Below, piece after piece: positions 9,001 to 63,040 of a stretch of DNA of 64,000 bases. Numbering within the stretch: position 1 is the first letter of the stretch; each line of letters starts with the position of its first letter. The notes beneath the pieces are model-generated. The model did no database searches. It was not told the DNA's origin and saw only the letters and a program-made list of their open reading frames with translations. Location: the NCBI GenBank assembly GCA_002269645.1, contig NIVC01001134.1, positions 248,001-312,000 of the forward strand, in the 5' to 3' direction. Source of the stretch: Macrostomum lignano. Lineage: Eukaryota. A program made the translations under genes and the position numbers.

Positions 9001-11771
9001 TGAGGTGATATATAAGCTATTAGCAAACTGATGTTTGAAAACATTTGATATTTTTAAAATTATTTGATATAAACATTTTTATATAGTGATTATCATTATT
9101 TGAAGTAGTTATAAACCAAAGGATTGCCAACAAAACCAATAAAATACATTAGGGCCTATTTAACAACTTAATAGTCTAGTTCAATAGTAGACCTAGAGGA
9201 AAAGGCCACTAGGGCCATGCCTCTTTAGTTATAACAAAAAATTTGTTATATTATACCTTTTGATAGACATACATGCGCAACCTCCAAAATTCGGTCGGCC
9301 GTGCGACTTAGTTTTAACAAAAAATGCGACGTAGTTTTTGGCTAAAAATGCGACTTACATGTAAAAAAAACCCTAAAGCAAAATTACCGCAACTTTGGGT
9401 AAACGGCAGGAGTAACTATGACTGTCTTATTAAGCTAAAATGCCTCGTCAGCTACTTAGTACTACTGCTTGGGTGTTTTTTCGGGTGGCCATTTTTGCGA
9501 CTTCTTTGGTTGGCCGCCAAATCGGTCGGCCGGATCGGCCGACTCGGCCGACTGTTGCGCATGTATGTTGATAGATAAAATATATAAGTTTATTTTCTAA
9601 TATTGGGTTATAAATACTTGGTATAACTTGCCCCCCTCAAAATTTTTCTTAGTCTGTCTTTGGTTGTCATTTTAAAAAAAAGATAATGTGATATAGGCCT
9701 AGATTCTTTTTTCTAAATATATTATTACTATTTATAATTATAAAATAGCACATTTTCAAAATAGCAGGCAATGGCTAGCTTTGCTGAAATAGCTGTTATA
9801 AATTGTGGTAGACCAAAATAATAATGTAACTGGGTGCTGACCAATTCAGGGACAAACAAATTCGGTGACAGAGATTCACCATAGACAAATTTGGCCAAAG
9901 CAAATTTGGCAACAATCTTGTCAAATTCAGCAATAGAATAATTCTGTATAATTTTATTAATTATTTTGGTACAATGATATCGATCATGCATATTAGCTTT
10001 CTTTTTAAATTGAGTTTGTTTTATCTATTATTTATCCTAAAATTTAATTCAATTATGCTTACCAATAAATGTTTGTTTAGGCCTGATTCTTGAAGAGATA
10101 CGCAATGCCTTTGATACAATATTTTCTATCAAAGGTCATGCATACAAGAGTTTAGTGGCTAGAGTCTCAAGGCACTTGCCACAGAAATCTAAATTTATAT
10201 AGTGTATATGTACAATAATTATATCAATTGACAATACTTCTATTCTGATATTTTCTGTATTTTTCTAAGTTAACTAACTAACTTCTACTTAGCTAACTAT
10301 GTATACCTTATAGTCATATGTCCTTAAGTTAAAGTCATATGTTGTACTATTAACAAAGGGGGTGGGGGTTGGTCTGGTCAGACAACAGATAGCTTATATC
10401 TGAAGCCTTGGTTGCAGTCAATAATTCCTTGACTGATTTAAAAATGACTTGTCACCAAATTTGCCTAAATTTTTGCCAACTGCCAAATTTGCTTTTGCCA
10501 AATTTGTCTGTGTTAATTCTGTTGCTGAATTTGTATGCATCCACTTAGGCCTAGCAACATAAGTCACCGACACCATTTGACTTTGTCTTTTGACAAAAAT
10601 AGGAAACAAAAACAAACAAATTAAAGATTTTTATAGCTTAATTCTGGATAATTTGGGAACCTGGAGTCACATTTTAAGTCAAAACCAAGCTGCATGGCTG
10701 ATGTAATTTCAGAGGTTGCATTTGCAAATGTATGGCTATTGGCTTATTATGGCTTATTAAGGTTTACTTTTATAATTATTTAGTTAGTTATCTTATCTTC
10801 ATAATTAATATTCTGAAGCTTTGACTAAGTAAAAGCATACCTGTGCTCGCAAATGAACTTCTTCCTTCAATGCAGCCTCTTTTTTAGAAAGCTCCTCTGT
10901 AACTTTATCGAGCTCATTTCTCAAACTTGTCATCTTGTTTTTAAGTGTTGCCAAAATGTTCTGGCCTTGACCCTGGTCCTTATTCGAAGACATAATCAAA
11001 TCAGTTAACACTGTATTTAAATTTCTAAGTAGGCCTAGTTCTTAGGAAAAAGTTATTTAAATCCAGTGTAAATGAGCTCAAACAAAGGCACTAAGACAAG
11101 TGGTAAAGGTTATTAAATTTACTATTAAGTGTCGTTAGCTAATTCACAAATTCGATTTTTTTCTATGAAACGCATTTTTTATCAAAATTCAAATGCCTCC
11201 TTTCGAAATAAACAAATAGATACATTTATTAGATATTTTTGCAGGATTTCAGCTGCACTAAAATACATAAAATAGGAAACTTACGTTGCTAGCTCGCTTT
11301 TCGGTCTCGTCCAAATTGGTGGTAGCTGCAGCTAATGTATCCTGCGCTTCGTCAACATTAATTTGCAATTGCTTTAATTTATTCTGAAACTCGCCCATCT
11401 CTTCTTCCTTCTTGTTCATTTCAGCTTCCTTTTCCTTTAGCTTTTCTTCCAGCTGGGTAGCTCTAAAATTTTTGAGTTGAATCCATCGGTGAGTGGGGCT
11501 TTATCGACATCTTAAACAATGCTTGCAAATTTGAATTCGAATTGTGTCGAATTCTGAGCTGGTATTCGTTCAGCATCGCAATCATACTCAAAATGTATTT
11601 GAAAACCCATGAAAGCAATCAGTGATGAAAGCAAATTCCTCATTATAATTTAAATACCATTGAAATATCAAACTCAAGTGCAATTTTCTGGTTCATCATG
11701 CAAACTTACTTTTCTCCAGCACTCTCACGCTCGTGCTTCATCACCAGCATCTTCTTCTTGATGGCGTCCAT
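50..11771 (-). CDS. TPM: Tropomyosin, long muscle-type isoform (spliced, 284 aa)
   Basis: Exons 11710-11771 ([12 protein letters not shown]), 11285-11462, 8158-8291 ([20 protein letters not shown]), 6578-6766 ([19 protein letters not shown]), 3307-3445 ([20 protein letters not shown]), 1662-1731, 50-132. All are GT-AG with compatible phases and sum to 855 nt = 284 aa + stop, the canonical tropomyosin length. Confidence 0.97.
1043..1112 (-). CDS. TPM: Tropomyosin alternative exon 8c (divergent)
   Basis: Exactly 70 nt, tttcaAG acceptor, GTTGCT donor, phase 0/1; [23 protein letters not shown]. Confidence 0.65.
1347..1416 (-). CDS. TPM: Tropomyosin alternative exon 8b
   Basis: 70 nt, phase 0/1, GTAAAA donor; [23 protein letters not shown]. 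Confidence 0.85.
1875..2125. repeat. AGGTCA-rich degenerate repeat
   Basis: Many GGTCA(A) motifs; related GGTCAT tracts at 3545-3930 and 4620-4915. Confidence 0.75.
2265..2327 (-). CDS. TPM: Tropomyosin alternative exon 7b
   Basis: 63 nt, ttgtttcttgcAG acceptor, GTAAAA donor; [21 protein letters not shown], paralogous to [21 protein letters not shown]. Confidence 0.9.
2787..3125. repeat. CTTCAGGT-based degenerate tandem repeat
   Basis: Repeated cttcaggtctgtacg / ggtttacccttcaggt units. Confidence 0.85.
4309..4455 (-). CDS. TPM: Tropomyosin alternative fused exon 5+6b
   Basis: 147 nt = 71+76, phase 0/0, GTGAAC donor; [49 protein letters not shown]. Confidence 0.88.
5734..6420. repeat. 54-bp minisatellite (~12 copies), G-quadruplex-like on minus strand
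   Basis: Unit ccctcaattttcctacccctccccagccccacctcactccgaactggacagcga, nearly invariant. Confidence 0.97.
6995..7112 (-). CDS. TPM: Tropomyosin alternative exon 4b
   Basis: 118 nt (canonical exon-4 size), AG/GT flanked, phase 2 in and 0 out; [39 protein letters not shown]. Confidence 0.88.
7229..7370. repeat. 17-bp minisatellite (~8 copies)
   Basis: Unit aggcactaaagtgcaca. Confidence 0.95.
7690..8085. repeat. 25-26-bp minisatellite
   Basis: Unit gggcgccaaagctgctgatagggag(g). Confidence 0.95.
9268..9567. mobile_element. Non-autonomous hAT-type MITE (300 bp)
   Basis: Perfect 14-bp TIRs CATACATGCGCAAC (9268-9281 / 9554-9567), perfect 8-bp TSD TTGATAGA (9260-9267 / 9568-9575), subterminal TCGGCCG and GCGACTT repeats. 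Confidence 0.9.
9397..9460 (+). pseudogene. Decayed 28S rRNA fragment (helix 69-71 region) inside the MITE
   Basis: 52/64 ungapped identity by hand to the conserved LSU sequence GGGTAAACGGCGGGAGTAACTATGACTCTCTTAAGGTAGCCAAATGCCTCGTCATCTAATTAGT (recalled, not searched). Confidence 0.85.
9850..10545. mobile_element. Decayed foldback/MITE-like element
   Basis: Inverted repeat 9883-9911 vs 10481-10509 (28/29 identical) with weaker extensions; termini and TSD not resolved. Confidence 0.45.
10841..10993 (-). CDS. TPM: Tropomyosin alternative first coding exon (short, exon-1b-like isoform)
   Basis: [51 protein letters not shown], 51 codons of coiled coil, ends in a phase-0 GTATGC donor compatible with exon 3; would give a ~255-aa short isoform. 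Confidence 0.88.
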
Positions 11772-14416: not shown

Positions 14417-14996
<580 letters not shown>

Positions 14997-15108: not shown

Positions 15109-16558
15109 TCAGTTGTCAGTTTCAGTTTTTCCACCTTTCCGGACAACGTCGGCCACCAGCTCCAGCAGTCGGTCGTCTGACAGAATCGCCACGTGCTGCG
15201 CCTTGGCCAGCCGCGTCACCCGCACCGGCGCCGCCTGTTTCGCCGACCAGTCGCGACAGAGGCGCGCCGTGGACGCCGCCACAGTGCCGTCGCCGTTCTC
15301 GTGCTCGTCGGCATCAGCCACTTTGTCGCCAACCTTCGGCCAGGCGATGCTGGCCAGAGTCGGCAGGCCGTCGCCAAAAACGCAAGTGGTGGTCACTCCG
15401 GGCGGCTTGCCGACGTCCGTGAGCTCGCCGTACCTGGCCCGGCCCTCGGCGTAGCCTTTCGCGAAGCTAGCCTTGGCGAACAGGGCGGACAAGTTGGCCG
15501 TGGTGTACACGGCGTCTGGCGGCGATGGCGGAGCCCTCTTCGACTTCACCAGGGGCCGGTCAGACCCGAATAGGATGGCATCGGGCAGCAGGTAGTGCGT
15601 GCTTGGCCAGGACCGCTGAACCGTGCGGAATTGCAGCGGATTGATGGTGGGAATTCCGAGGTTGTAGCCTGGAATGCAGTGGCTATTTAGAGTAGGGAAT
15701 TCCCGGGAATGTAGCTTTGAATTGGGTGGCTATTTATAGTAGGGAACTCCCGGGAATGTAGCCTTGAATGTGGTGGCTATTTATAGTAGGGGATTCCCGG
15801 CGCTGTAGCCTTGAATGTGGTGGCTATTTATAGTAGGGGATTCCCGGATTATAGCCTCGAATGTGGTGGCTATTTATAGTTGGAAACCCGGATTGCAGCC
15901 TTGAGTGTGATGCTATCTATAGTAGGGAATTCCCACATTGTAGAGTGGAATGCAGCGGCTATTTTTAAAAACGGGGTTTCCTACATGTACATGAAAGCCT
16001 AGAATGTCGAGCTATATATAATAGGAAAATCTCATTGTCTGATATGATACAGTTGTCAGTTGTCAGTTGTTTGATTGTACAAAGTAACTTGGATTGTTGA
16101 ATTGCCAAAGTCATCTATACAGAATGCGATACGAAAGTCAGCAGTCATTACATTGGTGGAAGTCTACTTATAGATGTAGAAAGGGGAATTCCTATTTGTA
16201 GGTTGTGACCTGGAATAACACAGGAATCTCATGGTATGGAAAATTCCATGCTTCCATACCTGAAAGCATGGCCAGGAGTGAGACAGTGACACCGCCGAAT
16301 GCGCCACCGATTGCTACAAAGTGCCCGATGTACTGATCCCTCCAATGCTGCGGCTGGGAGTGCAGAAAGTGAAGCATCAGTTTGCCACCGAGGCTGTGCG
16401 CTACGAGAACCACCTTGCGACCCGAAGCTCGATGGAAAGAGTCCTCGATGAGAGTCTTCAGGGACTGGAAATAATCCCCGAGTTCGTCTGCGGACAGAAT
16501 TTATTGAGATAGACATGACTCAACTTTAATTGCAATTTCCTGCTCACCTGCCCCATGA

Positions 16559-16648
<90 letters not shown>

Positions 16649-16664
16649 TGCCCGCCCGCCTGCC

Positions 16665-16696
<32 letters not shown>

Positions 16697-16740
16697 GGTC
16701 TGTTTGTCTGTCTGTCTTTGTGTCTGTCTGTCTGTCTTTG

Positions 16741-16833
<93 letters not shown>

Positions 16834-16836
16834 TTG

Positions 16837-16890
<54 letters not shown>

Positions 16891-19800
16891 CCAACCTGGC
16901 GCCTTCCGGAAGTCGTACGGGGCGGCTTTGATGTCGATATTTTTTGTGTAGTTGAGCTTCTCCTCTAGGTGAGCAACAATGCTTGAGTAGTAGGCGGCTG
17001 GAAGGAAAATTTTAAGAAGCTGTTAAGAATCGTTCTGAATACTACATGCATATTACAATAATAAATTTTTATGGTATCAATAAAATACTAAGTTGATAGT
17101 TTGGTGAATGTGTCAATGAAATATCTAATCAAATAAACTAACGCCAGTGCTCATAATCCACGAAGTACTCACTGTACTTTGTCTGCCAGTTAGAGAGCCA
17201 CAGCACAGTGTCGACGATTCCAAAGCCGGGCACGAAAGTTTGCACTCCGACATTGTCGTGAGTCGATGCCGCGGTTAGAAAGCTTTCCGGCTGAGTCTTT
17301 AGCCTGTGATTAAGAATTATGATCAAGGTGCAAGCTGCTGTTTTCGCGTTTTTTATTTAAAAAAAAAAATAAATCCGCGGATCTGACCCATTGGAAATGA
17401 ATTGTCGGAACAGTCGGAACTGAACTGTATATATGGGACCTCCGTTTGCAAATGTCTTTGTCCAACTAATTATTATTTAAACGCTATCTAATTAATACCA
17501 ATAAGCATGAAAAAAAAACAATTCAATTAAACCAGTTGTGGCTGGTTGAGCGAGGTGGGATTGCGCTGTGATATTTAACGGTCCGCGAGACTTGCCCGGC
17601 TCAGAATTGGGGTGTGGTGGGTTTCACCGCTCACATTAAGTGAACGCGAGGGGAAATCTCGCACCCCCCAAAACCCTAACCCCTGTCTTGAAGCTGATTG
17701 GTTGAAACAAAATAGCCAGTAAATTTTGTGCGCGTCTACTATGTATGTACATTTTTCAGGCTTCCCTGTATGGTTAAGAACTGGAATAAACCGCACTGGA
17801 CTGTAAATGTCATGTCCACCTGATACCCAGGCCAAGCACCATAAATAGAGCCACTTATCACTATTATAATCTATTACCTACACCAGCAGTATCGATAAAC
17901 TCGATTGATCAACTTTCAACTTGGGACAACTAGCAATATCCAGTATGAAGCTTCTGATCGTGTCCGCCGCTCTGATCGCAGTTGCAGCTGCTCACGCTGG
18001 AGGCCATGGCAGCTCTGATCTCTACGATAGCTACGGCGGTGGCTATGGAGGCCGCGGCTCTAGAGGCTACTACGGCGGCTACGGCACTAAAGGCTACGGA
18101 GGCCACGGCGATGAGGGCTATGAAGGCTACGGAGGCCACGGCGATGAGAGCCATAAAGGCTACGGAACTGGACGCCACGACTACAGTGCAGGTTCTGAGT
18201 ACGGAAGCTACATCTACAACGGCAATGAGGATGCCAAGGACAACGGCAACGGCTACGGCAACGAAAAGTATCCATCCAAGGGGTACCGGCGTCGCCGTTG
18301 AATGCATGCGGAGCTATCTAAGATACTAGTTTGCAATTGGGTACATTGGTTAGATTTATTGATAGCAGTCTGAACGATTTTGAGTTTGTTCCGTATCGTT
18401 TTCAAAATATATACGTAGTTTTATACAAATTAATTATCTCATAACGAACGAGTCCGTTAAATTAACTAGAGGTTTTAATTCTTTCCTTAATCACTCGCTT
18501 TTATCGGTATAAAGTTTGTTAATAATCAGCATTGAAATATCTTGAAATCATTCATAATTGTCAAAAAAAACTGACTTCTGCAGCAAGAGAAAACTTCCCC
18601 AGCGTAATAAAATGAGGATTTTAGCTCACACTAGGTTGTAGGCCATGCAGTTTACAGCTGGATAGAGCAGGCTGCTCATCTCCAGCCACAGCTGTTGCGG
18701 CCTGCCCTCGGGGGACCTCCGTCGGCAGTACCAGGGACTCTCAGCGCCGTTCAGGTGCGCCCACAGCTGGCTGCCACCGTTTCCTGGCACTGCAATGGTT
18801 GTTTTCGAAAAGAGTCTGATATTGTCACGAGTATCTTTCTTGGTTAGGTAGCTGAACTGTCCGCAATGCACCAGCATTTGAAGTTAATTCCTCAGTTCAG
18901 CCCTCAGTAGTCTATGGTTCCAAATGCATTGAGCCAACCCTCAGTAGTCTATGGTTCCATATGAACTGAGCCAACCCTCCAGTAGTCTATGGTTCCAAAT
19001 GAACTGAGCCAACCCTCCAGTAGTCTATGGTTCCAAATGAACTGAGCCAACCCTCAGTAGTCTATGGTTCCAAATGAACTGAGCCAACCCTCCAGTAGTC
19101 TATGGTTCCAAATGAACTGAGCCAACCCTCAGTAGTCTATGGTTCCAAATGAACTGAGCCAACCCTCAGTAGTCTATGGTTCCAAATGCATTGAGCCAAC
19201 CCTCAGTAGTCTATGGTTCCAAATGAACTGAGCCAACCCTCAGTAGTCTATGGTTCCAAATGAACTGAGCCAACCCTCCAGTAGTCTATGGTTCCAAATG
19301 CATTGAGCCAACCCTCAGTAGTCTATGGTTCCAAATGCACTGAGCCAACCCTCAGTAGTCTATGGTTCCAAATGAACTGAGCCAACCCTCAGTAGTCTAT
19401 GGTTCCAAATGCACTGAGCCAACCCTCAGTAGTCTATGGTTCCAAATGCATTGAGCCAACCCTCAGTAGTCTATGGTTCCAAATGAACTGAGCCAACCCT
19501 CAGTAGTCTATGGTTCCAAATGCATTGAGCCAACCCTCAGTAGTCTATGGTTCCAAATGAACTGAGCCAACCCTCAGTAGTCTATGGTTCCAAATGAACT
19601 GAGCCAACCCTCAGTAGTCTATGGTTCCAAATGCATTGAGCCAACCCTCAGTAGTCTATGGTTCCAAATGCACTGAGCCAACCCTCAGTAGTCTATGGTT
19701 CCAAATGAACTGAGCCAACCCTCAGTAGTCTATGGTTCCAAATGCACTGAGCCAACCCTCAGTAGTCTATGGTTCCAAATGCATTGAGCCAACCCTCAGT

Positions 19801-20716
19801 AGTCTATGGTTCCAAATGCACTGAGCCAACCCTCAGTAGTCTATGGTTCCAAATGCATTGAGCCAACCCTCAGTAGTCTATGGTTCCAAATGAACTGAGC
19901 CAACCCTCAGTAGTCTATGGTTCCAAATGAACTGAGCCAACCCTCAGTAGTCTATGGTTCCAAATGCACTGAGCCAACCCTCAGTAGTCTATGGTTCCAA
20001 ATGCACTGAGCCAACCCTCAGTAGTCTATGGCTACAAATGCATTGAGCCAACCCTCCAGTAGTCTATGGTTACAAATGCATTGAGCCAACCCTCAGTAGT
20101 CTATGGTTACAAATGCACTGAGTCAACCCTCAGTAGTCTATGGTTACAAATGCATTGAGCAACCCTCAGTAGTCTATGGTTACAAATGCACTGAGCCAAC
20201 CCTCAGTAGTCTATGGTTACAAATGCATTGAGCCATGCAGACCTCAGTAGTCTATGGCTACAAATGCATTGAGCAACCCTCAGTAGTCTATGGTTACAAA
20301 TGCATTGAGCCAACCCTCAGTAGTCTATGGTTCCAAATGCATTGAGCCAGCCCTCAGTAGTCTATGGCTACAAATGCATTGAGCCAGCCCTCAGTAGTCT
20401 ATGGCTACAAATGCATTGAGCCAGCCCTCAGTAGTCTATGGCTACAAATGCATTCAGCCAGCCCTCAGTAGTCTATGGCTACAAATGCATTCAGCCAGCC
20501 CTCAGTAGTCTATGGCTACAAATGCATTGAGCCAGCCCTCAGTAGTCTATGGCCCAACTGGGTTTGTTAGGTACACAGATCCATCAAAATAATCCGCATC
20601 TCACCCAAGATGACTGGGGTTCTTTCTTGGCTGTCAGACCCCTGGCAGCATGCTGCTAAAAGCAGCAATGAAACGAACCAGAAGACTGGAGCCGAAAACG
20701 GAGCGCCTTGGCTCAT
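15109..20716 (-). CDS. PLA2G15: Lysosomal phospholipase A2 / LCAT-family acyltransferase (6 exons, 430 aa)
   Basis: Exons 20605-20716 (signal peptide + TPVIL), 18630-18789 (VPGNGGSQL), 17173-17303 (VPGFG), 16896-16997 ([10 protein letters not shown]), 16260-16487 (nucleophile AHSLG), 15109-15668 (NGDGTV Asp, QHVAIL His). Phases are compatible and the total is 1293 nt. The exon 2/3 junction is the least certain. Confidence 0.93.
15649..16020. repeat. 46-bp degenerate minisatellite overlapping the last PLA2G15 acceptor
   Basis: Unit gggaattcccgggaatgtagccttgaatgtggtggctatttatagta, about 7-8 copies. Confidence 0.85.
16560..16890. repeat. Compound (GCCT)n(GTCT)n microsatellite
   Basis: Fills most of PLA2G15 intron 4 and abuts the donor at 16895. 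Confidence 0.98.
17840..17848 (+). promoter_or_regulatory. Putative TATA-like box of the nested Gly/Tyr-rich gene
   Basis: CATAAATAG about 100 nt upstream of the ATG at 17945. Confidence 0.4.
17945..18301 (+). CDS. Secreted Gly/Tyr/His-rich small protein (eggshell/DOPA-protein-like), nested gene
   Basis: Intronless 118-aa [21 protein letters not shown] + [13 protein letters not shown] repeats, 17 Tyr, C-terminal RRRR. TATA-like CATAAATAG at 17840 and AATAAA at 18606-18611. Lies in intron 2 of the phospholipase gene on the opposite strand. Confidence 0.85.
   Translation: MKLLIVSAALIAVAAAHAGGHGSSDLYDSYGGGYGGRGSRGYYGGYGTKGYGGHGDEGYEGYGGHGDESHKGYGTGRHDYSAGSEYGSYIYNGNEDAKDNGNGYGNEKYPSKGYRRRR
18895..20550. 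repeat. 37-38-bp minisatellite (~44 copies)
   Basis: Unit cagtagtctatggttccaaatgaactgagccaaccct; fills PLA2G15 intron 1. Confidence 0.98.
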
Positions 20717-21084
20717 CCCGCCGCGGGCCTGTTTTGCTACTGAAAAACAAATCTGTGCAGAAAAATATTTTGCTTTCGAATCGCTTTTTCTGACCTCGAG
20801 TTTGCACCTACCGTTTTAAACTTTCTCGTATCAACTGTGAATTGTCTGCATATCTTTTCTGCTTTTATTGCACTAGATTGATAAGATATAGGCGGTCATG
20901 TACCACCTTAATCAGTGCATAGATAAGTTTCTAGAGCTCTGCAGCAAATGCCTTGAGAATTCCAAGTTCAAACTATAAGATTTAGTAAATATCATGCACT
21001 TATTTGGGAAAGTCTTAATCAACTACATTTAGGTCGATTATACAAAGTGTGCCTGTAATGAGCATGGTTTGATTGTAAAACTTC

Positions 21085-22205
21085 GATTAGATTGGCTGAG
21101 CCAGTGTGGCTGGGTTGTAAAACTTCGATTAGATTGGCTGAGCCAGTGTGGCTGGGTTGTAAAACTTCGATTGGATTGGCAGAGCCAGTGAGGCTGGGTT
21201 GTAAAACTACAATTGGATTGGCTGAGCCAGTGAGGCTGGGTTGTAAAACTCCGATTGGATTGGCTGAGCCAGTGAGGCTGGGTTGTAAAACTACAATTGG
21301 ATTGGCTGAGCCAGTGAGGCTGGGTTGTAAAACTACAATTGGATTGGCTGAGCCAGTGAGGCTGGGCTGTAAAACTCCAATTGGATTGACTGAGCCAGTG
21401 TGGTTGGGTTGTAAAACTCCAATTGGATTGACTGAGCCAGTGTGGTTGGGTTGTAAAACTCCAATTGGATTGACTGAGCCAGTGTGGTTGGGTTGTAAAA
21501 CTCCAATTGGATTGACTGAGCCAGTGTGGCTGGGTTGTAAAACTCCAATTGGATTGGCTGAGCCAGTGTGGCTGGGTTGTAAAACTCCAATTGGATTGAC
21601 TGAGCCAGTGTGGTTGGGTTGTAAAACTCCAATTGGATTGACTGAGCCAGTGTGGTTGGGTTGTAAAACTCCAATTGGATTGACTGAGCCAGTGTGGCTG
21701 GGTTGTAAAACTCCAATTGGATTGGCTGAGCCAGTGTGGCTGGGTTGTAAAACTCCAATTGGATTGACTGAGCCAGTGTGGTTGGGTTGTAAAACTCCAA
21801 TTGGATTGACTGAGCCAGTGTGGTTGGGTTGTAAAACTCCAATTGGATTGACTGAGCCAGTGTGGTTGGGTTGTAAAACTCCAATTGGATTGACTGAGCC
21901 AGTGTGGTTGGGTTGTAAAACTCCAATTGGATTGACTGAGCCAGTGTGGTTGGGTTGTAAAACTCCAATTGGATTGACTGAGCCAGTGTGGCTGGGTTGT
22001 AAAACTCCAATTGGATTGGCTGAGCCAGTGTGGCTGGGTTGTAAAACTCCAATTGGATTGGCTGAGCCAGTGTGGTTGGGTTGTAAAACTCCGATTGGAT
22101 TGGCTGAGCCAGTGAGGCTGGGTTGTAAAACTCCGATTGGATTGGCTGAGCCAGTGAGGCTGGGTTGTAAAACTCCGATTGGATTGGCTGAGCCAGTGTG
22201 GCTGA
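21085..22205. repeat. 42-bp minisatellite (~27 copies) with CCAAT motifs
   Basis: Unit ggattgRctgagccagtgtggYtgggttgtaaaactccaatt. Confidence 0.98.
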
Positions 22206-58518: not shown

Positions 58519-58842
58519 AGCTTCCAGCAGTTTTTCGATCAGATAAGACAGTCAAGACAGTTGGGCAAGCAGAAGCAGATTTTAAGGCAGGCGGCTTCGT
58601 GACGAAGAGCTTATATAATTAGAGGTGCACGAAGCGTACGTACGGTTATGTAGCGATTGCCAAGACTGCTCAGCATGAAGGAAGTCAGTAAACGCAACAG
58701 GTGACGCGTTTTTAATATTGATATTGACGCACTGGCTGAGATACTGACAGCCAAAATAGTTATACTTATCTTTCATGCGCACAAATCTTCTGACTGACTG
58801 CTCGGTTGACTTAGCGAGCACAAATATTTTTGTGGTCTCGAT

Positions 58843-59814
58843 TGGAGCTACAATTGGGTCTTGATTGGAGCTACGATTGGGTTTTGATTGGAGCTACAAT
58901 TGGGTCTTGATTGGAGCTACAATTGGGTTTTGATTGGAGCTGCAATTGGGTTTTGATTGGAGCTACAATGGGGTCTTGATTGGAGCTACAATTGGGTCTT
59001 GATTGGAGCTACAATTGGGTCTTGATTGGAGCTACAATTGGGTCTTGATTGGAGCTACAATTGGGTCTTGATTGGAGCTACAATTGGGTCTTGATTGGAG
59101 CTACAATTGGGTCTTGATTGGAGCTACAATTGGGTCTTGATTGGAGCTACAATTGGGTTTTGATTGGAGCTGCAATTGGGTTTTGATTGGAGCTACAATT
59201 GGGTCTTGATTGGAGCTACAATTGGGTCTTGATTGGAGCTACAATTGGGTCTTGATTGGAGCTACAATTGGGTCTTGATTGGAGCTACAATTGGGTTTTG
59301 ATTGGAGCTGCAATTGGGTTTTGATTGGAGCTACAATGGGGTCTTGATTGGAGCTACAATTGGGTCTTGATTGGAGCTACAATTGGGTCTTGATTGGAGC
59401 TACAATTGGGTCTTGATTGGAGCTACAATTGGGTCTTGATTGGAGCTACAATTGGGTCTTGATTGGAGCTACAATTGGGTCTTGATTGGAGCTACAATTG
59501 GGTCTTGATTGGAGCTACAATTGGGTTTTGATTGGAGCTGCAATTGGGTTTTGATTGGAGCTACAATTGGGTCTTGATTGGAGCTACAATTGGGTCTTGA
59601 TTGGAGCTACAATTGGGTCTTGATTGGAGCTACAATTGAGTTTTGATTGGAGCTACAATTGGGTTTTGATGGGAGCTACAATTGGGTTTTGATTGGAGCT
59701 ACAATTGAGTTTTGATTGGAGCTACAATTGGGTTTTGATTGGAGCTACAATTGGGTTTTGATTGGAGCTACAATTGAGTTTTGATTGGAGCTACAATTGG
59801 GTTTTGATGGGAGC
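58843..59814. repeat. 23-bp minisatellite, left arm
   Basis: Unit gattggagctacaattgggtctt. Confidence 0.98.
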
Positions 59815-60941
59815 TAGGGGTGTTCGGGGTTCGGGGTCGGGTCGGGTTTTGGGTCGCGTTTTGGTACCGGGTTCTGGGTTCGGGATAGGGTGTTCGGGTC
59901 GAGTATCGGGTTCGGGGTTAGGTGTTCGGGTTCGGGTGTTCGGGTTCGGGTTTTCGTGTCGGGTTTAGGGTCGGGTTTTTGGAGTTTTAGGGTTCAAAGG
60001 AAAAATAAACTTTAGCTATTTAAAAAATAAATTTCTAATGTCGTTATGTAACGCTTTTTAAGTATAAAAAGGCGAATATTTAAACTTCGAGAAACCGAAA
60101 TTAAGGACTGAATTAATGAATGTAGGGTTCTACGGATGAAATCTATAAATCTAACTATAACTATAATCATAATTAAACATAATTATGCTTCCAGAATTCT
60201 AGCCAATTAGTTGTAGTCCTACACCGAGGGTTGTGGCTTGTAGGCCCCCTTTTCTGTTTTCTATTTTCTGTTTTTGCGGTACATGCAGAAGTTTTAAATA
60301 AAAAATTTAAGGCTGTTCAACCTTCATTTTTCAATTCTTCATTAAGCTACCACTCGAGTGCTGCGCTAACAATGACAACCTAAACCCAAGTTGGCAAACA
60401 TTTGGATAAGTGGATGTTAAAGTCAATGCTAAGATCTTAAGAATGAGGAGTCAAATTATAGGGAGGGGAGAATTGTGAAGACTTTCTAGTCAGTTAAGGA
60501 GCCAGGACTGCAAATGAGAACGAGAAGAAGACTACTAGAGGTGCTAGCTGATGACTAGAAATAGGAGTTAAGGAGCCAGGACTGCAAATGAGAACGAGAA
60601 GAAGACTACTAGAGGTGCTAGCTGATGACTAGAAATAGGAGTTAAGGAGCCAGGACTGCAAATGAGAACGAGAAGAAGACTACTAGAGGTACCTCAGGAC
60701 GAGTAACTCTCTTTAGATGTCACTCTTGGAAAAAAGATCACCACAGAAAGCCTGAGATGAAGCGTTCTCCTTTCAGGGAAAGTTCAGGGTCGGTCCGGGT
60801 CGGGTTTCGGGTTCGGGGTACAGAGTCCGGGTTGGGTTTCGGGTTCGGGGTCAGTGTTTCGGGTTCGGGGTTTACCCCGAATGTTGATATTGATCGGGGT
60901 TTACCCCGAACACGGAAAAAATGGAAACCCGAACACCCCTA
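59815..60941. mobile_element. Non-autonomous hAT-type element (1127 bp) inserted into a 23-bp minisatellite
   Basis: Perfect 14-bp TIRs TAGGGGTGTTCGGG. Flanking 8-mers ATGGGAGC / ATTCGAGC are each one change from the host unit ATTGGAGC. Subterminal GGGTTC-rich tracts at both ends and an internal 74-bp tandem repeat (about 2.7 copies, 60492-60690). Confidence 0.8.
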
Positions 60942-63040
60942 ATTCGAGCTACAATTGGGTTTTGATTGTCACTACAATGGAATCTTTATTGGAGGTAAAA
61001 TGGGGTCTTGATTAGCGCTACAATGGGGTCTTGATTGGAGGTACAATGGGGTCTTGATTGGAGGTAAAATGGGGTCTTGATTAGAGCTACAATGGGGTCT
61101 TGATTGGAGATACAATTGGGTCTTGACTGGAGCTACAATGGGGTCTTGATTGGAGCTACAATGGGGTCTTGACTGGAGCTACAATGGGGTCTTGATTGGA
61201 GATACAATGGGGTCTTGATTGGAGCTACAATGGGGTCTTGATTGGAGATACAATGGGGTCTTGACTGGAGCTACAATGGGGTCTTGATTGGAGCTACAAT
61301 GGGGTCTTGATTGGAGCTACAATGGGGTCTTTATTGGAGGTACAATGGGGTCTTGATTGGAGCTACAATGGGGTCTTGACTGGAGCTACAATGGGGTCTT
61401 GATTGGAGCTACAATGGGGTCTTGATTGGAGGTACAATGGGGTCTTGATTGGAGCTACAATGGGGTCTTGATTGGAGGTACAATGGGGTCTTGACTGGAG
61501 CTACGAGTACAATGGGGTCTTGATTGGAGCTCCAATGGGGTCTTTATTGGAGGTACAATGGGGTCTTGATTGGAGCTACAATGGGGTCTTGACTGGAGCT
61601 ACAATTGGGTCTTGACTGGAGCTACAATGGGGTCTTGATTGGAGCTACAATGGGGTCTTGACTGGAGCTACAATGGGGTCTTGATTGGAGATACAATGGG
61701 GTCTTGATTGGAGCTCCAATGGGGTCTTTATTGGAGATACAATGGGGTCTTGACTGGAGCTACAATGGGGTCTTGATTGGAGGTACAATGGGGTCTTGAT
61801 TGGAGCTACAATGGGGTCTTGATTGGAGGTACAATGGGGTCTTGACTGGAGCTACGAGTACAATGGGGTCTTGATTGGAGCTCCAATGGGGTCTTTATTG
61901 GAGGTACAATGGGGTCTTGATTGGAGCTACAATGGGGTCTTGACTGGAGCTACAATTGGGTCTTGACTGGAGCTACAATGGGGTCTTGATTGGAGCTACA
62001 ATGGGGTCTTGACTGGAGCTACAATGGGGTCTTGATTGGAGATACAATGGGGTCTTGATTGGAGCTCCAATGGGGTCTTTATTGGAGATACAATGGGGTC
62101 TTGACTGGAGCTACAATGGGGTCTTGACTGGAGCTACAATGGGGTCTTGATTGGAGCTACAATGGGGTCTTGATTGGAGGTACAATGGGGTCTTGATTGG
62201 AGCTACAATGGGGTCTTGATTGGAGCTACAATGGGGTCTTGATTGGAGGTACAATTGGGTCTTGACTGGAGCTACGAGTACAATGGGGTCTTGATTGGAG
62301 CTCCAATGGGGTCTTTATTGGAGGTACAATGGGGTCTTGATTGGAGCTACAATGGGGTCTTGACTGGAGCTACAATGGGGTCTTGATTGGAGCTACAATG
62401 GGGTCTTGATTGGAGGTACAATGGGGTCTTGATTGGAGATACAATGGGGTCTTGACTGGAGCTACAATGGGGTCTTGATTGGAGCTACAATGGGGTCTTG
62501 ATTGGAGCTACAATGGGGTCTTGATTGGAGCTACAATGGGGTCTTGATTGGAGGTACAATTGGGTCTTGACTGGAGCTACGAGTACAATGGGGTCTTGAT
62601 TGGAGCTCCAATGGGGTCTTTATTGGAGGTACAATGGGGTCTTGATTGGAGCTACAATGGGGTCTTGACTGGAGCTACAATGGGGTCTTGATTGGAGCTA
62701 CAATGGGGTCTTGATTGGAGGTACAATGGGGTCTTGATTGGAGATACAATGGGGTCTTGACTGGAGCTACAATGGGGTCTTGATTGGAGCTACAATGGGG
62801 TCTTGATTGGAGCTACAATGGGGTCTTGATTGGAGGTACAATGGGGTCTTGATTGGAGATACAATGGGGTCTTGATTGGAGGTACAATGGGGTCTTGATT
62901 GGAGCTACAATGGGGTCTTGATTAGCGCTACAATGAAGTCTTGATTATCACTACAATGGGATCTTGATTGGCGCTACAATGGGGTCTTGATTGTCGCTAA
63001 AATGGGATCATTAGTGATGCTAGCAACAACGGTGTCTTGA
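60942..63040. repeat. 23-bp minisatellite, right arm, with higher-order structure
   Basis: Unit gattggagctacaatggggtctt; a +6-bp variant (gctacgagtac) recurs at 61501, 61852, 62272 and 62577. Confidence 0.98.

What the first reader, a model, noticed from the sequence alone, without database searches (positions are those of the whole stretch)
17840..18640. Nested antisense gene for a secreted Gly/Tyr/His-rich, eggshell/DOPA-like protein
An intronless 118-aa ORF with a signal peptide, 17 Tyr mostly in GYG contexts, a duplicated GYGGHGDE motif, no Cys and an RRRR tail sits in intron 2 of PLA2G15. The composition resembles tyrosinase-tanned flatworm eggshell proteins and other DOPA/His-rich structural or adhesive proteins (compositional similarity only). 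Its likely AATAAA (18606) is ~20 nt from the host exon-2 donor, so the 3' end would overlap the host exon antisense and could interfere with host transcription or splicing. It is probably a lineage-specific, uncharacterised biomaterial protein.
Basis: partly seen in the sequence, partly recalled or inferred. Interest (0 to 1): 0.7.

Follow-up and report, generated by a model that had tools for sequence, protein, structure and literature searches.

The report
Orphan secreted Gly/Tyr/His-rich flatworm gene
A small, probably real gene inside an intron of a lipase-family gene of the flatworm Macrostomum lignano encodes a secreted, disordered glycine/tyrosine/histidine-rich repeat protein that has no detectable relatives, looks like a hardening structural protein such as an eggshell precursor, and has no tested function.

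Summary
The window is Macrostomum lignano contig NIVC01001134.1. An intronless ORF (17945-18301, + strand, 118 aa) lies inside intron 2 of a minus-strand LCAT/PLA2G15-family gene. It is already called as a gene in the GenBank annotation, which is built from RNA-seq transcripts.

The protein has an N-terminal signal-like segment. Its mature part is 32% Gly, 17% Tyr and 5% His, with no Cys, a duplicated GYGGHGDE motif and an RRRR tail.

New evidence comes from two paralogous M. lignano loci with the same nested arrangement. One ORF copy is identical. The other has the 33-nt [11 protein letters not shown] unit expanded in frame from 2 to 9 copies (195 aa). ORF and promoter diverge less (4.2% and 1.6%) than flanking intron and 3'UTR (9%). 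No frame-breaking indel occurs, and the stop codon is kept (TGA to TAA).

Three database-wide protein searches, Pfam and PDB found no relative. The databases lack close relatives of M. lignano, so the gene's age is unknown.

The eggshell/DOPA reading fits composition only. Expression site, DOPA and antisense interference are untested. This is an uncharacterised orphan of a known compositional kind, of modest interest.

The parts
17511..17944 (+). Conserved upstream block: putative promoter and 5'UTR of the nested gene. It includes an inverted CCAAT (ATTGG, 17697-17701) and a TATA-like CATAAATAG (17840-17848), about 100 nt before the ATG.
   Evidence: Mismatch to the diverged paralogue L003 is 1.6%, against 9.0% in flanking intron and 3'UTR (Fisher p=2e-7). 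The block is single copy in each locus. TATA-like hexamers are reported. There is no upstream ATG between the TATA and the start codon (read).
17945..18301 (+). Intronless CDS of 118 aa including the stop codon: a secreted Gly/Tyr/His-rich protein.
   Evidence: It is called as a 118-aa gene in GenBank assembly GCA_002269645.1. It is intact in three paralogous loci. It shows 4.2% mismatch against 9% neutral (p=0.004) and no frame-breaking indel where 6.7 events are expected (p=0.001).
17945..17998 (+). Predicted signal peptide [18 protein letters not shown], with an Ala-His-Ala cleavage motif before GGHG.
   Evidence: Read from the sequence: a charged n-region (MK), a 14-residue hydrophobic core, and small residues at -3 and -1. 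No signal-peptide predictor was available, so this is inferred.
18088..18166 (+). Coding 33-nt tandem repeat (unit [12 protein letters not shown]), 2.4 copies here and 9 copies in paralogue L003.
   Evidence: TRF gives period 33 with 91% matches. L003 has an in-frame insertion of 231 nt, which is 7 x 33.
18302..18629 (+). Putative 3'UTR of the nested gene. The canonical AATAAA is at 18606-18611, and weaker variants are at 18406, 18508 and 18521.
   Evidence: The UTR body diverges at the neutral rate (9.1%, with 6 indel events). The last 37 nt (18593-18629), which include AATAAA, are invariant in all three copies.
17304..18629 (-). Host intron 2 (1326 nt), which contains the nested gene.
   Evidence: Exon reconstruction gives a 430-aa protein that matches the deposited P0041 on visual comparison.
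15109..20716 (-). Host gene of the LCAT/PLA2G15 family (BOX15_Mlig020808g1). Exons are 20716-20605, 18789-18630, 17303-17173, 16997-16896, 16487-16260 and 15668-15109.
   Evidence: The product carries PF02450. The best named hits are 'group XV phospholipase A2-like' proteins at 35-36% identity.

Best explanation
This is a genuine, intronless, protein-coding gene of Macrostomum lignano, nested antisense in intron 2 of an LCAT/PLA2G15-family gene.

Shown:
- The ORF, its composition and the nesting.
- The GenBank gene call.
- Three paralogous copies, with promoter and ORF more conserved than the flanking intron.
- In-frame repeat expansion in one copy.

Inferred from sequence:
- Transcription starts about 30 nt after a TATA-like box near 17841.
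- The mRNA is about 0.75 kb and is polyadenylated after the AATAAA at 18606, next to the host exon-2 edge.
- The product enters the secretory pathway and loses an 18-residue signal peptide.
- The mature product is a 100-residue, near-neutral, intrinsically disordered protein (32% Gly, 17% Tyr, with His, Lys, Asp and Glu) built around [11 protein letters not shown] units.

Inferred by analogy only, and my committed guess: it is a structural matrix precursor stored in secretory granules and hardened after release. Hardening would be by oxidation of its Tyr residues (DOPA/quinone or dityrosine) and cross-linking to Lys/His, possibly helped by metal binding to the His-Asp-Glu units. The most likely material is the eggshell, made from oocyte eggshell granules or shell glands. 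Repeat number would set protein size and cross-link density and is free to vary.
For: Gene reality:
- GenBank assembly GCA_002269645.1 calls a 118-aa gene here. That annotation derives from genome-guided RNA-seq transcripts plus TransDecoder (PMC5730564).
- Against paralogue L003, mismatches are 4.2% in the ORF and 1.6% in the promoter block, versus 9.0-9.1% in distal intron and 3'UTR. Host introns are 85-91% identical and host exons 96-100%.
- The ORF has no frame-breaking indel where 6.7 events are expected.
- The only ORF indel is 231 nt, which is 7 x 33.
- The stop codon is kept as TGA to TAA.
- The L002 copy has zero differences across the 357-nt ORF, while the distal intron differs by 3.5% plus indels.
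- Gly and Tyr codon choice (GGC, TAC) matches the host CDS.
- The start codon has A at -3, and the 5'UTR has no uATG.

Protein class:
- AlphaFold2 gives mean pLDDT 47 and no secondary structure.
- There is no Pfam or PDB match.

Functional analogy:
- Trematode eggshell precursors are secreted Gly/Tyr-rich proteins: p14 has 11% Y and 44% G, and p48 has 26% Y and 15% G (PMC3499410).
- In those proteins Tyr is often followed by Gly, and they are tanned by tyrosinase to Lys (PMC2758302). Here 9 of 17 Tyr are followed by Gly, and the mature protein has 5 Lys and 5 His.
- M. lignano oocytes make eggshell granules, and the animal has shell/cement glands (PMC4490696).
- Repeat units are not flanked by basic residues, and the protein is neutral to acidic. 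This fits a structural protein better than a peptide precursor or a cationic antimicrobial peptide.
Against: - No expression site, protein detection or DOPA evidence for this gene was found in any source.
- There is no sequence homology to any eggshell protein or to anything else. The functional link is compositional only.
- Gly/Tyr-rich composition is shared by unrelated protein classes.
- pN/pS against L003 is about 0.55 from only 14 substitutions, which is weak purifying selection.
- Two other frames over the ORF are also open in all copies. The choice of frame therefore rests on the signal peptide, the flanking signals and the annotation.
- An identical ORF in L002 and the variant in L003 were not called as genes.
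- No transcript contig with this exact product is on record outside the genome assembly.
- Low divergence of the ORF and promoter could partly reflect gene conversion between paralogues.
Confidence: 0.4

Rival explanations
1. It is another rapidly evolving reproductive or glandular secretion. Candidates are a prostate seminal-fluid protein, or a cement/shell-gland or other gland product that is not a tanned structural component.
For: The protein is small, secreted and without homologues, and its repeat number varies. This is typical of reproduction-related orphans in Macrostomum, which evolve fast (PMC7336406; PMC5977470). The protein diverges about three times faster than its host protein: 9 of 118 residues against about 12 of 430.
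Against: No probe or primer matching this gene appears in the supplements of the seminal-fluid in situ screen or the positional RNA-seq paper. This is a weak test. A composition of 32% Gly and 17% Tyr is not a described feature of those proteins. Known flatworm temporary adhesives are very large proteins, and no DOPA was found in footprints (PMC9229212).
Confidence: 0.2
2. It is a Gly/His/Tyr-rich antimicrobial or metal-binding peptide. This would be analogous to plant shepherins or to the nematode GYGG-rich NLP/CNC peptides, secreted by the epidermis or gut.
For: The GYGGHG motif is the N-terminus of shepherin I, a Gly/His-rich peptide whose activity and fibril formation depend on Zn(II) (PMC10698721). 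The protein has a signal peptide, is small and lacks Cys. The nematode comparison is from my own knowledge.
Against: The mature protein is not cationic. Its pI is 6.6, and the 9-repeat paralogue has pI 4.6 because each unit carries Asp-Glu...Glu. No homology was found. Processing sites that would release short peptides are absent between the units.
Confidence: 0.12
3. It is not a protein-coding gene. The ORF would be an accident of a GC-rich coding-like minisatellite in an intron, and the annotation would reflect a non-coding or intron-derived transcript that TransDecoder over-called.
For: Three overlapping frames are open. The window is dense in minisatellites that create long ORFs. The ORF itself contains a 33-nt repeat. 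Database searches found no homologue, and the product is absent from the large protein collection. The copies in L002 and L003 are not annotated.
Against: The unique, non-repetitive N-terminal signal-like segment and the C-terminal 50 residues are conserved. ORF divergence is half the neutral rate, and there is no frame-breaking indel. The stop codon is preserved by TGA to TAA. A strongly conserved TATA/CCAAT-bearing block lies upstream and an AATAAA downstream, both on the same strand. Codon use matches the host.
Confidence: 0.08
4. It is a neuropeptide or peptide-hormone precursor that is cleaved at basic residues, with RRRR as one of the sites.
For: It has a signal peptide, repeated units and a C-terminal tetra-Arg.
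Against: The repeat units are not separated by dibasic sites. No Gly-Lys/Arg amidation signal follows any unit. RRRR is at the extreme C-terminus, so cleavage there releases nothing. The expanded paralogue adds seven units with no basic residue at all.
Confidence: 0.03

Closest known systems
Trematode eggshell precursor proteins (Schistosoma p14/p19/p48, Fasciola vitelline proteins)
   Same: Flatworm origin, secretory, small, rich in Gly and Tyr with Tyr often followed by Gly, and with Lys/His available for quinone cross-links. The mature protein here has 32% G and 17% Y, which lies between p14 (44% G, 11% Y) and p48 (15% G, 26% Y).
   Different: There is no detectable sequence similarity. It has no Cys. 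From memory, p14 does contain Cys. Its acidic His-Asp-Glu repeat unit is not described for those families. M. lignano has no vitellaria, so any eggshell role would run through oocyte granules or shell glands. Expression and DOPA content are unknown.
Shepherin-type Gly/His-rich peptides and plant class glycine-rich proteins
   Same: A signal peptide is followed by a Gly-rich low-complexity body. It shares the exact GYGGHG motif and has His residues positioned for Zn/Cu binding.
   Different: Shepherins are short cationic peptides cut from a precursor. This protein is neutral to acidic, Tyr-rich and lacks internal processing sites. It comes from a different kingdom and shows no homology.
His/Gly/Tyr-rich sclerotised biomaterial proteins (Nereis jaw Nvjp-1, squid beak His-rich proteins, mussel foot proteins) and insect chorion GYGG arms
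   Same: These are secreted, disordered, Gly-rich proteins with His and Tyr/DOPA. They are hardened by metal coordination or oxidative cross-linking, and repeat number varies between copies. This comparison is from my own knowledge and was not tested here.
   Different: There is no homology. This protein is much smaller than most of them. His content is modest, at 5% in the mature protein and 7% in the expanded copy. No evidence links it to any hard structure.
Nested intronic genes in metazoan genomes
   Same: A small intronless gene lies wholly inside a host intron on the opposite strand, which is the commonest nested arrangement. This generalisation is from my own knowledge. Here the arrangement is inherited by all three paralogous loci.
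   Different: The poly(A) signal lies unusually close to the host exon edge, at 18 nt. No functional coupling between the two genes has been shown.

Membership tests
Trematode eggshell precursor families (p14/p19/p48, vitelline proteins) | Sequence homology to a family member | tested here: not met
   No protein scored at E<=0.01, at E<=0.001 among 1.84 billion representatives, or at E<=10 with a two-paralogue profile. These databases include public flatworm proteomes only to an unknown extent.
Trematode eggshell precursor families (p14/p19/p48, vitelline proteins) | High Gly and Tyr content, with Tyr commonly followed by Gly | tested here: met
   The mature protein has 32% Gly and 17% Tyr, and 9 of 17 Tyr are followed by Gly. 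Reference values come from PMC3499410 and PMC2758302.
Trematode eggshell precursor families (p14/p19/p48, vitelline proteins) | Expression in eggshell-forming cells and packaging in shell granules | not testable with these tools
   No expression data for this gene were found in the searchable papers or supplements.
Trematode eggshell precursor families (p14/p19/p48, vitelline proteins) | Tyr converted to DOPA/quinone by tyrosinase and cross-linked into the shell | not testable with these tools
   This needs biochemistry. Only the substrate residues (Tyr, Lys, His) are present.
Secreted protein (classical signal peptide) | N-terminal n-, h- and c-regions with small residues at -3 and -1 | tested here: inconclusive
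   MK + [14 protein letters not shown] + AHA|GG fits the rule by eye. It is conserved in L003 with one V-to-A change. No signal-peptide predictor was available.
Gly/His-rich cationic antimicrobial peptides (shepherin-like) | Net positive charge, and a short mature peptide released by processing | tested here: not met
   The pI is 6.6, and 4.6 in the expanded paralogue. There are no internal dibasic sites between the units. Only the GYGGHG motif is shared.
Neuropeptide precursors | Repeated peptides flanked by dibasic cleavage sites, often with Gly amidation donors | tested here: not met
   Units abut directly (…[14 protein letters not shown]…), and RRRR occurs only at the C-terminus.
LCAT/PLA2G15 family (host gene) | PF02450 domain, and the alpha/beta-hydrolase nucleophile motif | tested here: met
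   PF02450 is on record for the 430-aa product. An AHSLGG motif is present. The best named relatives are group XV phospholipase A2-like proteins at 35-36% identity. Strict orthology to PLA2G15 rather than LCAT was not resolved.
Nested (intronic, antisense) gene | The whole transcription unit lies inside one host intron on the opposite strand | tested here: met
   The CDS (17945-18301) and the predicted promoter and poly(A) signal lie within intron 2 (17304-18629) of the minus-strand host. The exact 3' end could reach 0-12 nt into host exon 2, and this was not measured.

The most novel reading that the evidence does not exclude
A free-living, archoophoran flatworm makes a tanned extracellular matrix, most plausibly the eggshell. 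It would use an orphan Gly/Tyr/His-rich protein unrelated in sequence to the parasite p14/p19/p48 families. The modular [11 protein letters not shown] unit would combine Tyr cross-linking with His/Asp/Glu metal coordination, and it varies from 2 to 9 copies between duplicated genome copies. This would be convergent invention of eggshell chemistry within Platyhelminthes. The gene would be born and kept inside an intron, with its poly(A) site abutting a host exon.
Probability: 0.22. Interest if true: 0.45.

Novelty: new member of a known kind. Interest (0 to 1): 0.3.

Why it matters
If the structural reading is right, this would be the first candidate matrix or eggshell precursor in a free-living model flatworm that already has transgenesis and RNAi. 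It would show whether quinone-tanned eggshell proteins in flatworms are homologous or were repeatedly invented from low-complexity sequence.

The short His-Asp-Glu-Tyr repeat is also a compact motif of interest for bio-inspired cross-linkable or metal-binding materials.

If the reading is wrong, this is one more uncharacterised orphan secreted protein. Its main value would then be as a clean example of an annotated nested gene under constraint, with repeat-number variation between homeologous copies.

Tried and rejected
Homology and family searches that found nothing:
- Word-indexed search.
- Exhaustive HMMER search over 1.84 billion representatives.
- Profile of two paralogues at E<=10.
- Pfam and PDB sequences.
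- Rfam on the whole window and on 17300-18700, and tRNA search. No known RNA gene explains the conserved upstream block.
- tblastn of the protein against the window. There is no second copy in the 64 kb.

Exact-product look-ups:
- The 118-aa product is on one contig only and is absent from the 15-billion protein collection.
- The TTG-started 126-aa form and the antisense 125-aa ORF are not on record.

Literature:
- No paper or held supplement links this sequence to an expression pattern.
- RNA815_13, the shell/cement-gland transcript of Arbore et al., is a collagen/vWA-like protein and not this gene.

Other points:
- The bacterial promoter/terminator scan is irrelevant for a eukaryote.
- AlphaFold2 gave only a low-confidence coil, so I ran no fold search.
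- I rejected using ORF openness as evidence, because other frames are equally open.
- I rejected trans-splicing at the acceptor-like TTTTTCAG|G (about 17752-17760) as the main 5' end. It would leave several upstream ATGs, whereas the TATA-proximal start leaves none. It is not excluded.
Full report
**Identity of the window.** The exact 118-aa product of the ORF is on record on one contig, NIVC01001134.1 of assembly GCA_002269645.1. It is called there as a gene inside a 430-aa PF02450 (LCAT) gene and next to a GAF+PDEase gene. From my own knowledge, this assembly is Macrostomum lignano Mlig_3_7. The deposited names of the host protein, BOX15_Mlig020808g1 [Macrostomum lignano], confirm it. The GenBank annotation of this assembly was derived from genome-guided RNA-seq transcript assemblies. 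Coding potential was called by TransDecoder after filtering out non-coding and repeat-overlapping transcripts (PMC5730564). The gene call therefore implies an assembled transcript. I could not see the reads themselves.

**Checking the observation.**
- The ORF starts at ATG 17945 and ends with the stop at 18299-18301.
- The product is [18 protein letters not shown] followed by a 100-residue body.
- The body is 32% Gly, 17% Tyr, 9% Ser, 7% Asp, 7% Arg, 6% Glu, 5% His, 5% Lys and 5% Asn, with pI 6.6 and mass 10.6 kDa. It has no Cys and ends in RRRR.
- GYGGHGDE occurs at residues 50 and 61. It comes from a 33-nt tandem unit.
- Of 17 Tyr, 6 are in strict GYG, 9 are followed by Gly, and 12 have Gly on at least one side.
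- A TATA-like CATAAATAG lies at 17840-17848, and an inverted CCAAT (ATTGG) at 17697-17701.
- The start codon has A at -3, and there is no upstream ATG between the TATA and the start.
- The only canonical AATAAA downstream is at 18606-18611.

**Host gene.** I rebuilt the host gene by enumerating GT-AG junctions that give an open 430-aa frame. The LCAT-like solution has exons 20716-20605, 18789-18630, 17303-17173, 16997-16896, 16487-16260 and 15668-15109 on the minus strand. On visual comparison its product matches deposited protein P0041. Intron 2 is therefore 17304-18629 and contains the whole nested unit. The AATAAA ends 18 nt before the host exon-2 edge.

**Is it more than chance?** ORF length alone is not informative here. 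Two other frames across the same stretch are open (115 aa in +2 and 125 aa antisense). The window is packed with minisatellites that generate many ORFs over 180 aa.

The decisive evidence came from paralogues. The host protein belongs to a cluster of three M. lignano proteins on three contigs. I fetched all three loci. Each has the PDE-LCAT synteny, and each carries the nested ORF in intron 2.

Copy L002 (NIVC01000061.1):
- Its ORF is identical to the window at all 357 nt.
- The distal part of the same intron differs by 3.5% plus indels.

Copy L003 (NIVC01000391.1) is the more diverged copy:

| Region | Mismatch to the window |
|---|---|
| Distal intron | 9.0% |
| 3'UTR | 9.1% |
| ORF | 4.2% (Fisher p=0.004) |
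| Upstream block 17511-17944 | 1.6% (p=2e-7) |

For scale, host introns are 85-91% identical and host exons 96-100%.

The flanking 535 nt carry 10 indel events, of 1, 1, 1, 1, 2, 2, 3, 4, 4 and 8 nt. The ORF carries only one, a 231-nt insertion equal to 7 x 33 nt. The expectation was 6.7 events, so the chance of no frame-breaking event is about 0.001. That insertion expands [11 protein letters not shown] from 2 to 9 copies and gives a 195-aa protein with the same signal peptide, the same C-terminal 50 residues and the same RRRR. The stop codon changed from TGA to TAA.

pN/pS is about 0.55, from 5 synonymous and 9 non-synonymous changes. This is weak purifying selection measured with low power. 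Gly and Tyr codon use (GGC, TAC) matches the host CDS.

Indel and divergence patterns preserve all frames equally. The choice of this particular frame and strand therefore rests on four things: the signal-peptide-like N-terminus, the promoter signals upstream, the poly(A) signal downstream, and the annotation. Together these make a real protein-coding gene very likely. I put the non-coding or artefact alternative at about 8%.

**Relatives.** None was found:
- A word-indexed search of 5.8 billion proteins.
- An exhaustive HMMER scan of 1.84 billion representatives.
- A two-paralogue profile at E<=10.
- Pfam and PDB sequences.

Two caveats apply. The protein itself is not in that collection. The best LCAT hit outside M. 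lignano is only 35-36% identical, so the databases contain no close relative of this species. The gene is an orphan with respect to what could be searched, but its age within Macrostomorpha is unknown.

**What it probably is.** AlphaFold2 without an alignment gives mean pLDDT 47 and no secondary structure. This is consistent with intrinsic disorder, although single-sequence predictions are weak. The protein is secreted (inferred), small, Gly/Tyr-rich and Cys-free. It has Lys and His, and it is built from a unit whose copy number is free to vary between duplicated loci.

Those features fit a structural matrix precursor hardened by tyrosine oxidation. In flatworms the known examples are the trematode eggshell precursors:
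- p14 has 11% Y and 44% G, and p48 has 26% Y and 15% G (PMC3499410).
- In these proteins Tyr is typically followed by Gly.
- Tyrosinase converts the Tyr to DOPA-quinone, which then binds Lys (PMC2758302).

M. lignano has no vitellaria. Its oocytes deposit eggshell granules, and shell/cement glands surround the antrum (PMC4490696). The cell biology for such a protein therefore exists. This is analogy, not membership. The homology test failed, and neither expression nor DOPA could be tested. I give the structural/eggshell reading about 0.4 overall, and about 0.2-0.25 for the eggshell specifically.

**Rivals.**
- A cationic Gly/His antimicrobial peptide. This is suggested by the GYGGHG motif shared with Zn-dependent shepherin I (PMC10698721). 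It is disfavoured by the neutral pI of 6.6, the acidic pI of 4.6 in the expanded copy, and the absence of processing sites.
- A neuropeptide precursor. This is disfavoured because the units are not flanked by basic residues and RRRR is terminal.
- A temporary-adhesion protein. This is unlikely because known flatworm adhesives are very large and no DOPA was found in footprints (PMC9229212).
- A fast-evolving seminal-fluid or gland secretion. This remains a serious alternative (about 0.2) that only expression data can separate.

**The antisense-interference idea.** That is expected both for a used poly(A) signal and for host splice-donor context. Cleavage 10-30 nt after AATAAA would fall between 9 nt short of the exon edge and 12 nt into the exon. 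Nothing here shows regulatory coupling. Opposite-strand nesting is the common arrangement for nested genes (my own knowledge).

**Verdict.** It is already annotated as a hypothetical protein but is uncharacterised. Its function is a composition-based inference. It is a new member of a known compositional kind of protein rather than a new kind of system, and it is of modest interest. The most useful new facts from this check are three: the three-copy comparison showing constraint on promoter and ORF, the 2-versus-9 repeat polymorphism between homeologous copies, and the identification of the organism, which makes direct tests (ISH, RNAi, reporter lines) straightforward.

Noticed in passing
window 17511-17944: The block upstream of the nested ORF is the most conserved non-exonic sequence in the locus, with 1.6% mismatch to L003 against 9% for neighbouring intron. 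Its + strand at 17530-17680 folds better than shuffles (z=-3.06), and the - strand less so (z=-1.85). It has no Rfam or tRNA hit and is single copy in each locus. It could be purely a promoter/enhancer, or it could hide a small structured RNA.
   Followed up: partly
window 14418-14996 and 16559-16889: Two long tetranucleotide arrays are reverse complements of each other: (GACA)x145 just downstream of the host gene, and (CTGT)x82 in host intron 4. They bracket host exons 5-6 about 1.5 kb apart and could pair as a long inverted repeat in DNA or pre-mRNA.
   Followed up: no
window 18901-20552 and 21073-22204: Host intron 1 is almost entirely a 37-nt minisatellite (44.5 copies). A 42-nt minisatellite (27 copies) sits just upstream of the host first exon and creates ORFs of 379-416 aa in several frames. 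These are spurious-looking ORFs that a naive scan would flag.
   Followed up: partly
whole window: Minisatellite density is extreme: TRF gives 42 rows with score >=400 and periods of 4-243 nt. For example, the same 23-nt unit occurs at 58834-59816 and 60942-63006. Most ORFs of at least 180 aa in the window coincide with these arrays.
   Followed up: no
window ~23986 onward (-), L002 1-7057, L003 1-7132: The neighbouring gene is a 934-aa GAF+PDEase cyclic-nucleotide phosphodiesterase. PDE-LCAT synteny is kept in all three paralogous loci. Two copies are about 97-98% identical in introns (window and L002), and one is about 85-91% identical (L003). This is consistent with the known large-scale duplication of the M. 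lignano genome.
   Followed up: partly
window 17752-17760 (+): A good 3' splice-acceptor-like TTTTTCAG|G lies about 185 nt upstream of the nested ATG, inside the conserved block. It could be a trans-splice acceptor, and many M. lignano genes are trans-spliced. Using it would leave several upstream ATGs in the leader.
   Followed up: no
L002 12010-12363 (-) and L003 ~11167-11751 (-): The identical 118-aa ORF in L002 and the 195-aa expanded variant in L003 are not annotated as genes in the GenBank record, although the window copy is. Copies of this gene are therefore under-annotated.
   Followed up: yes
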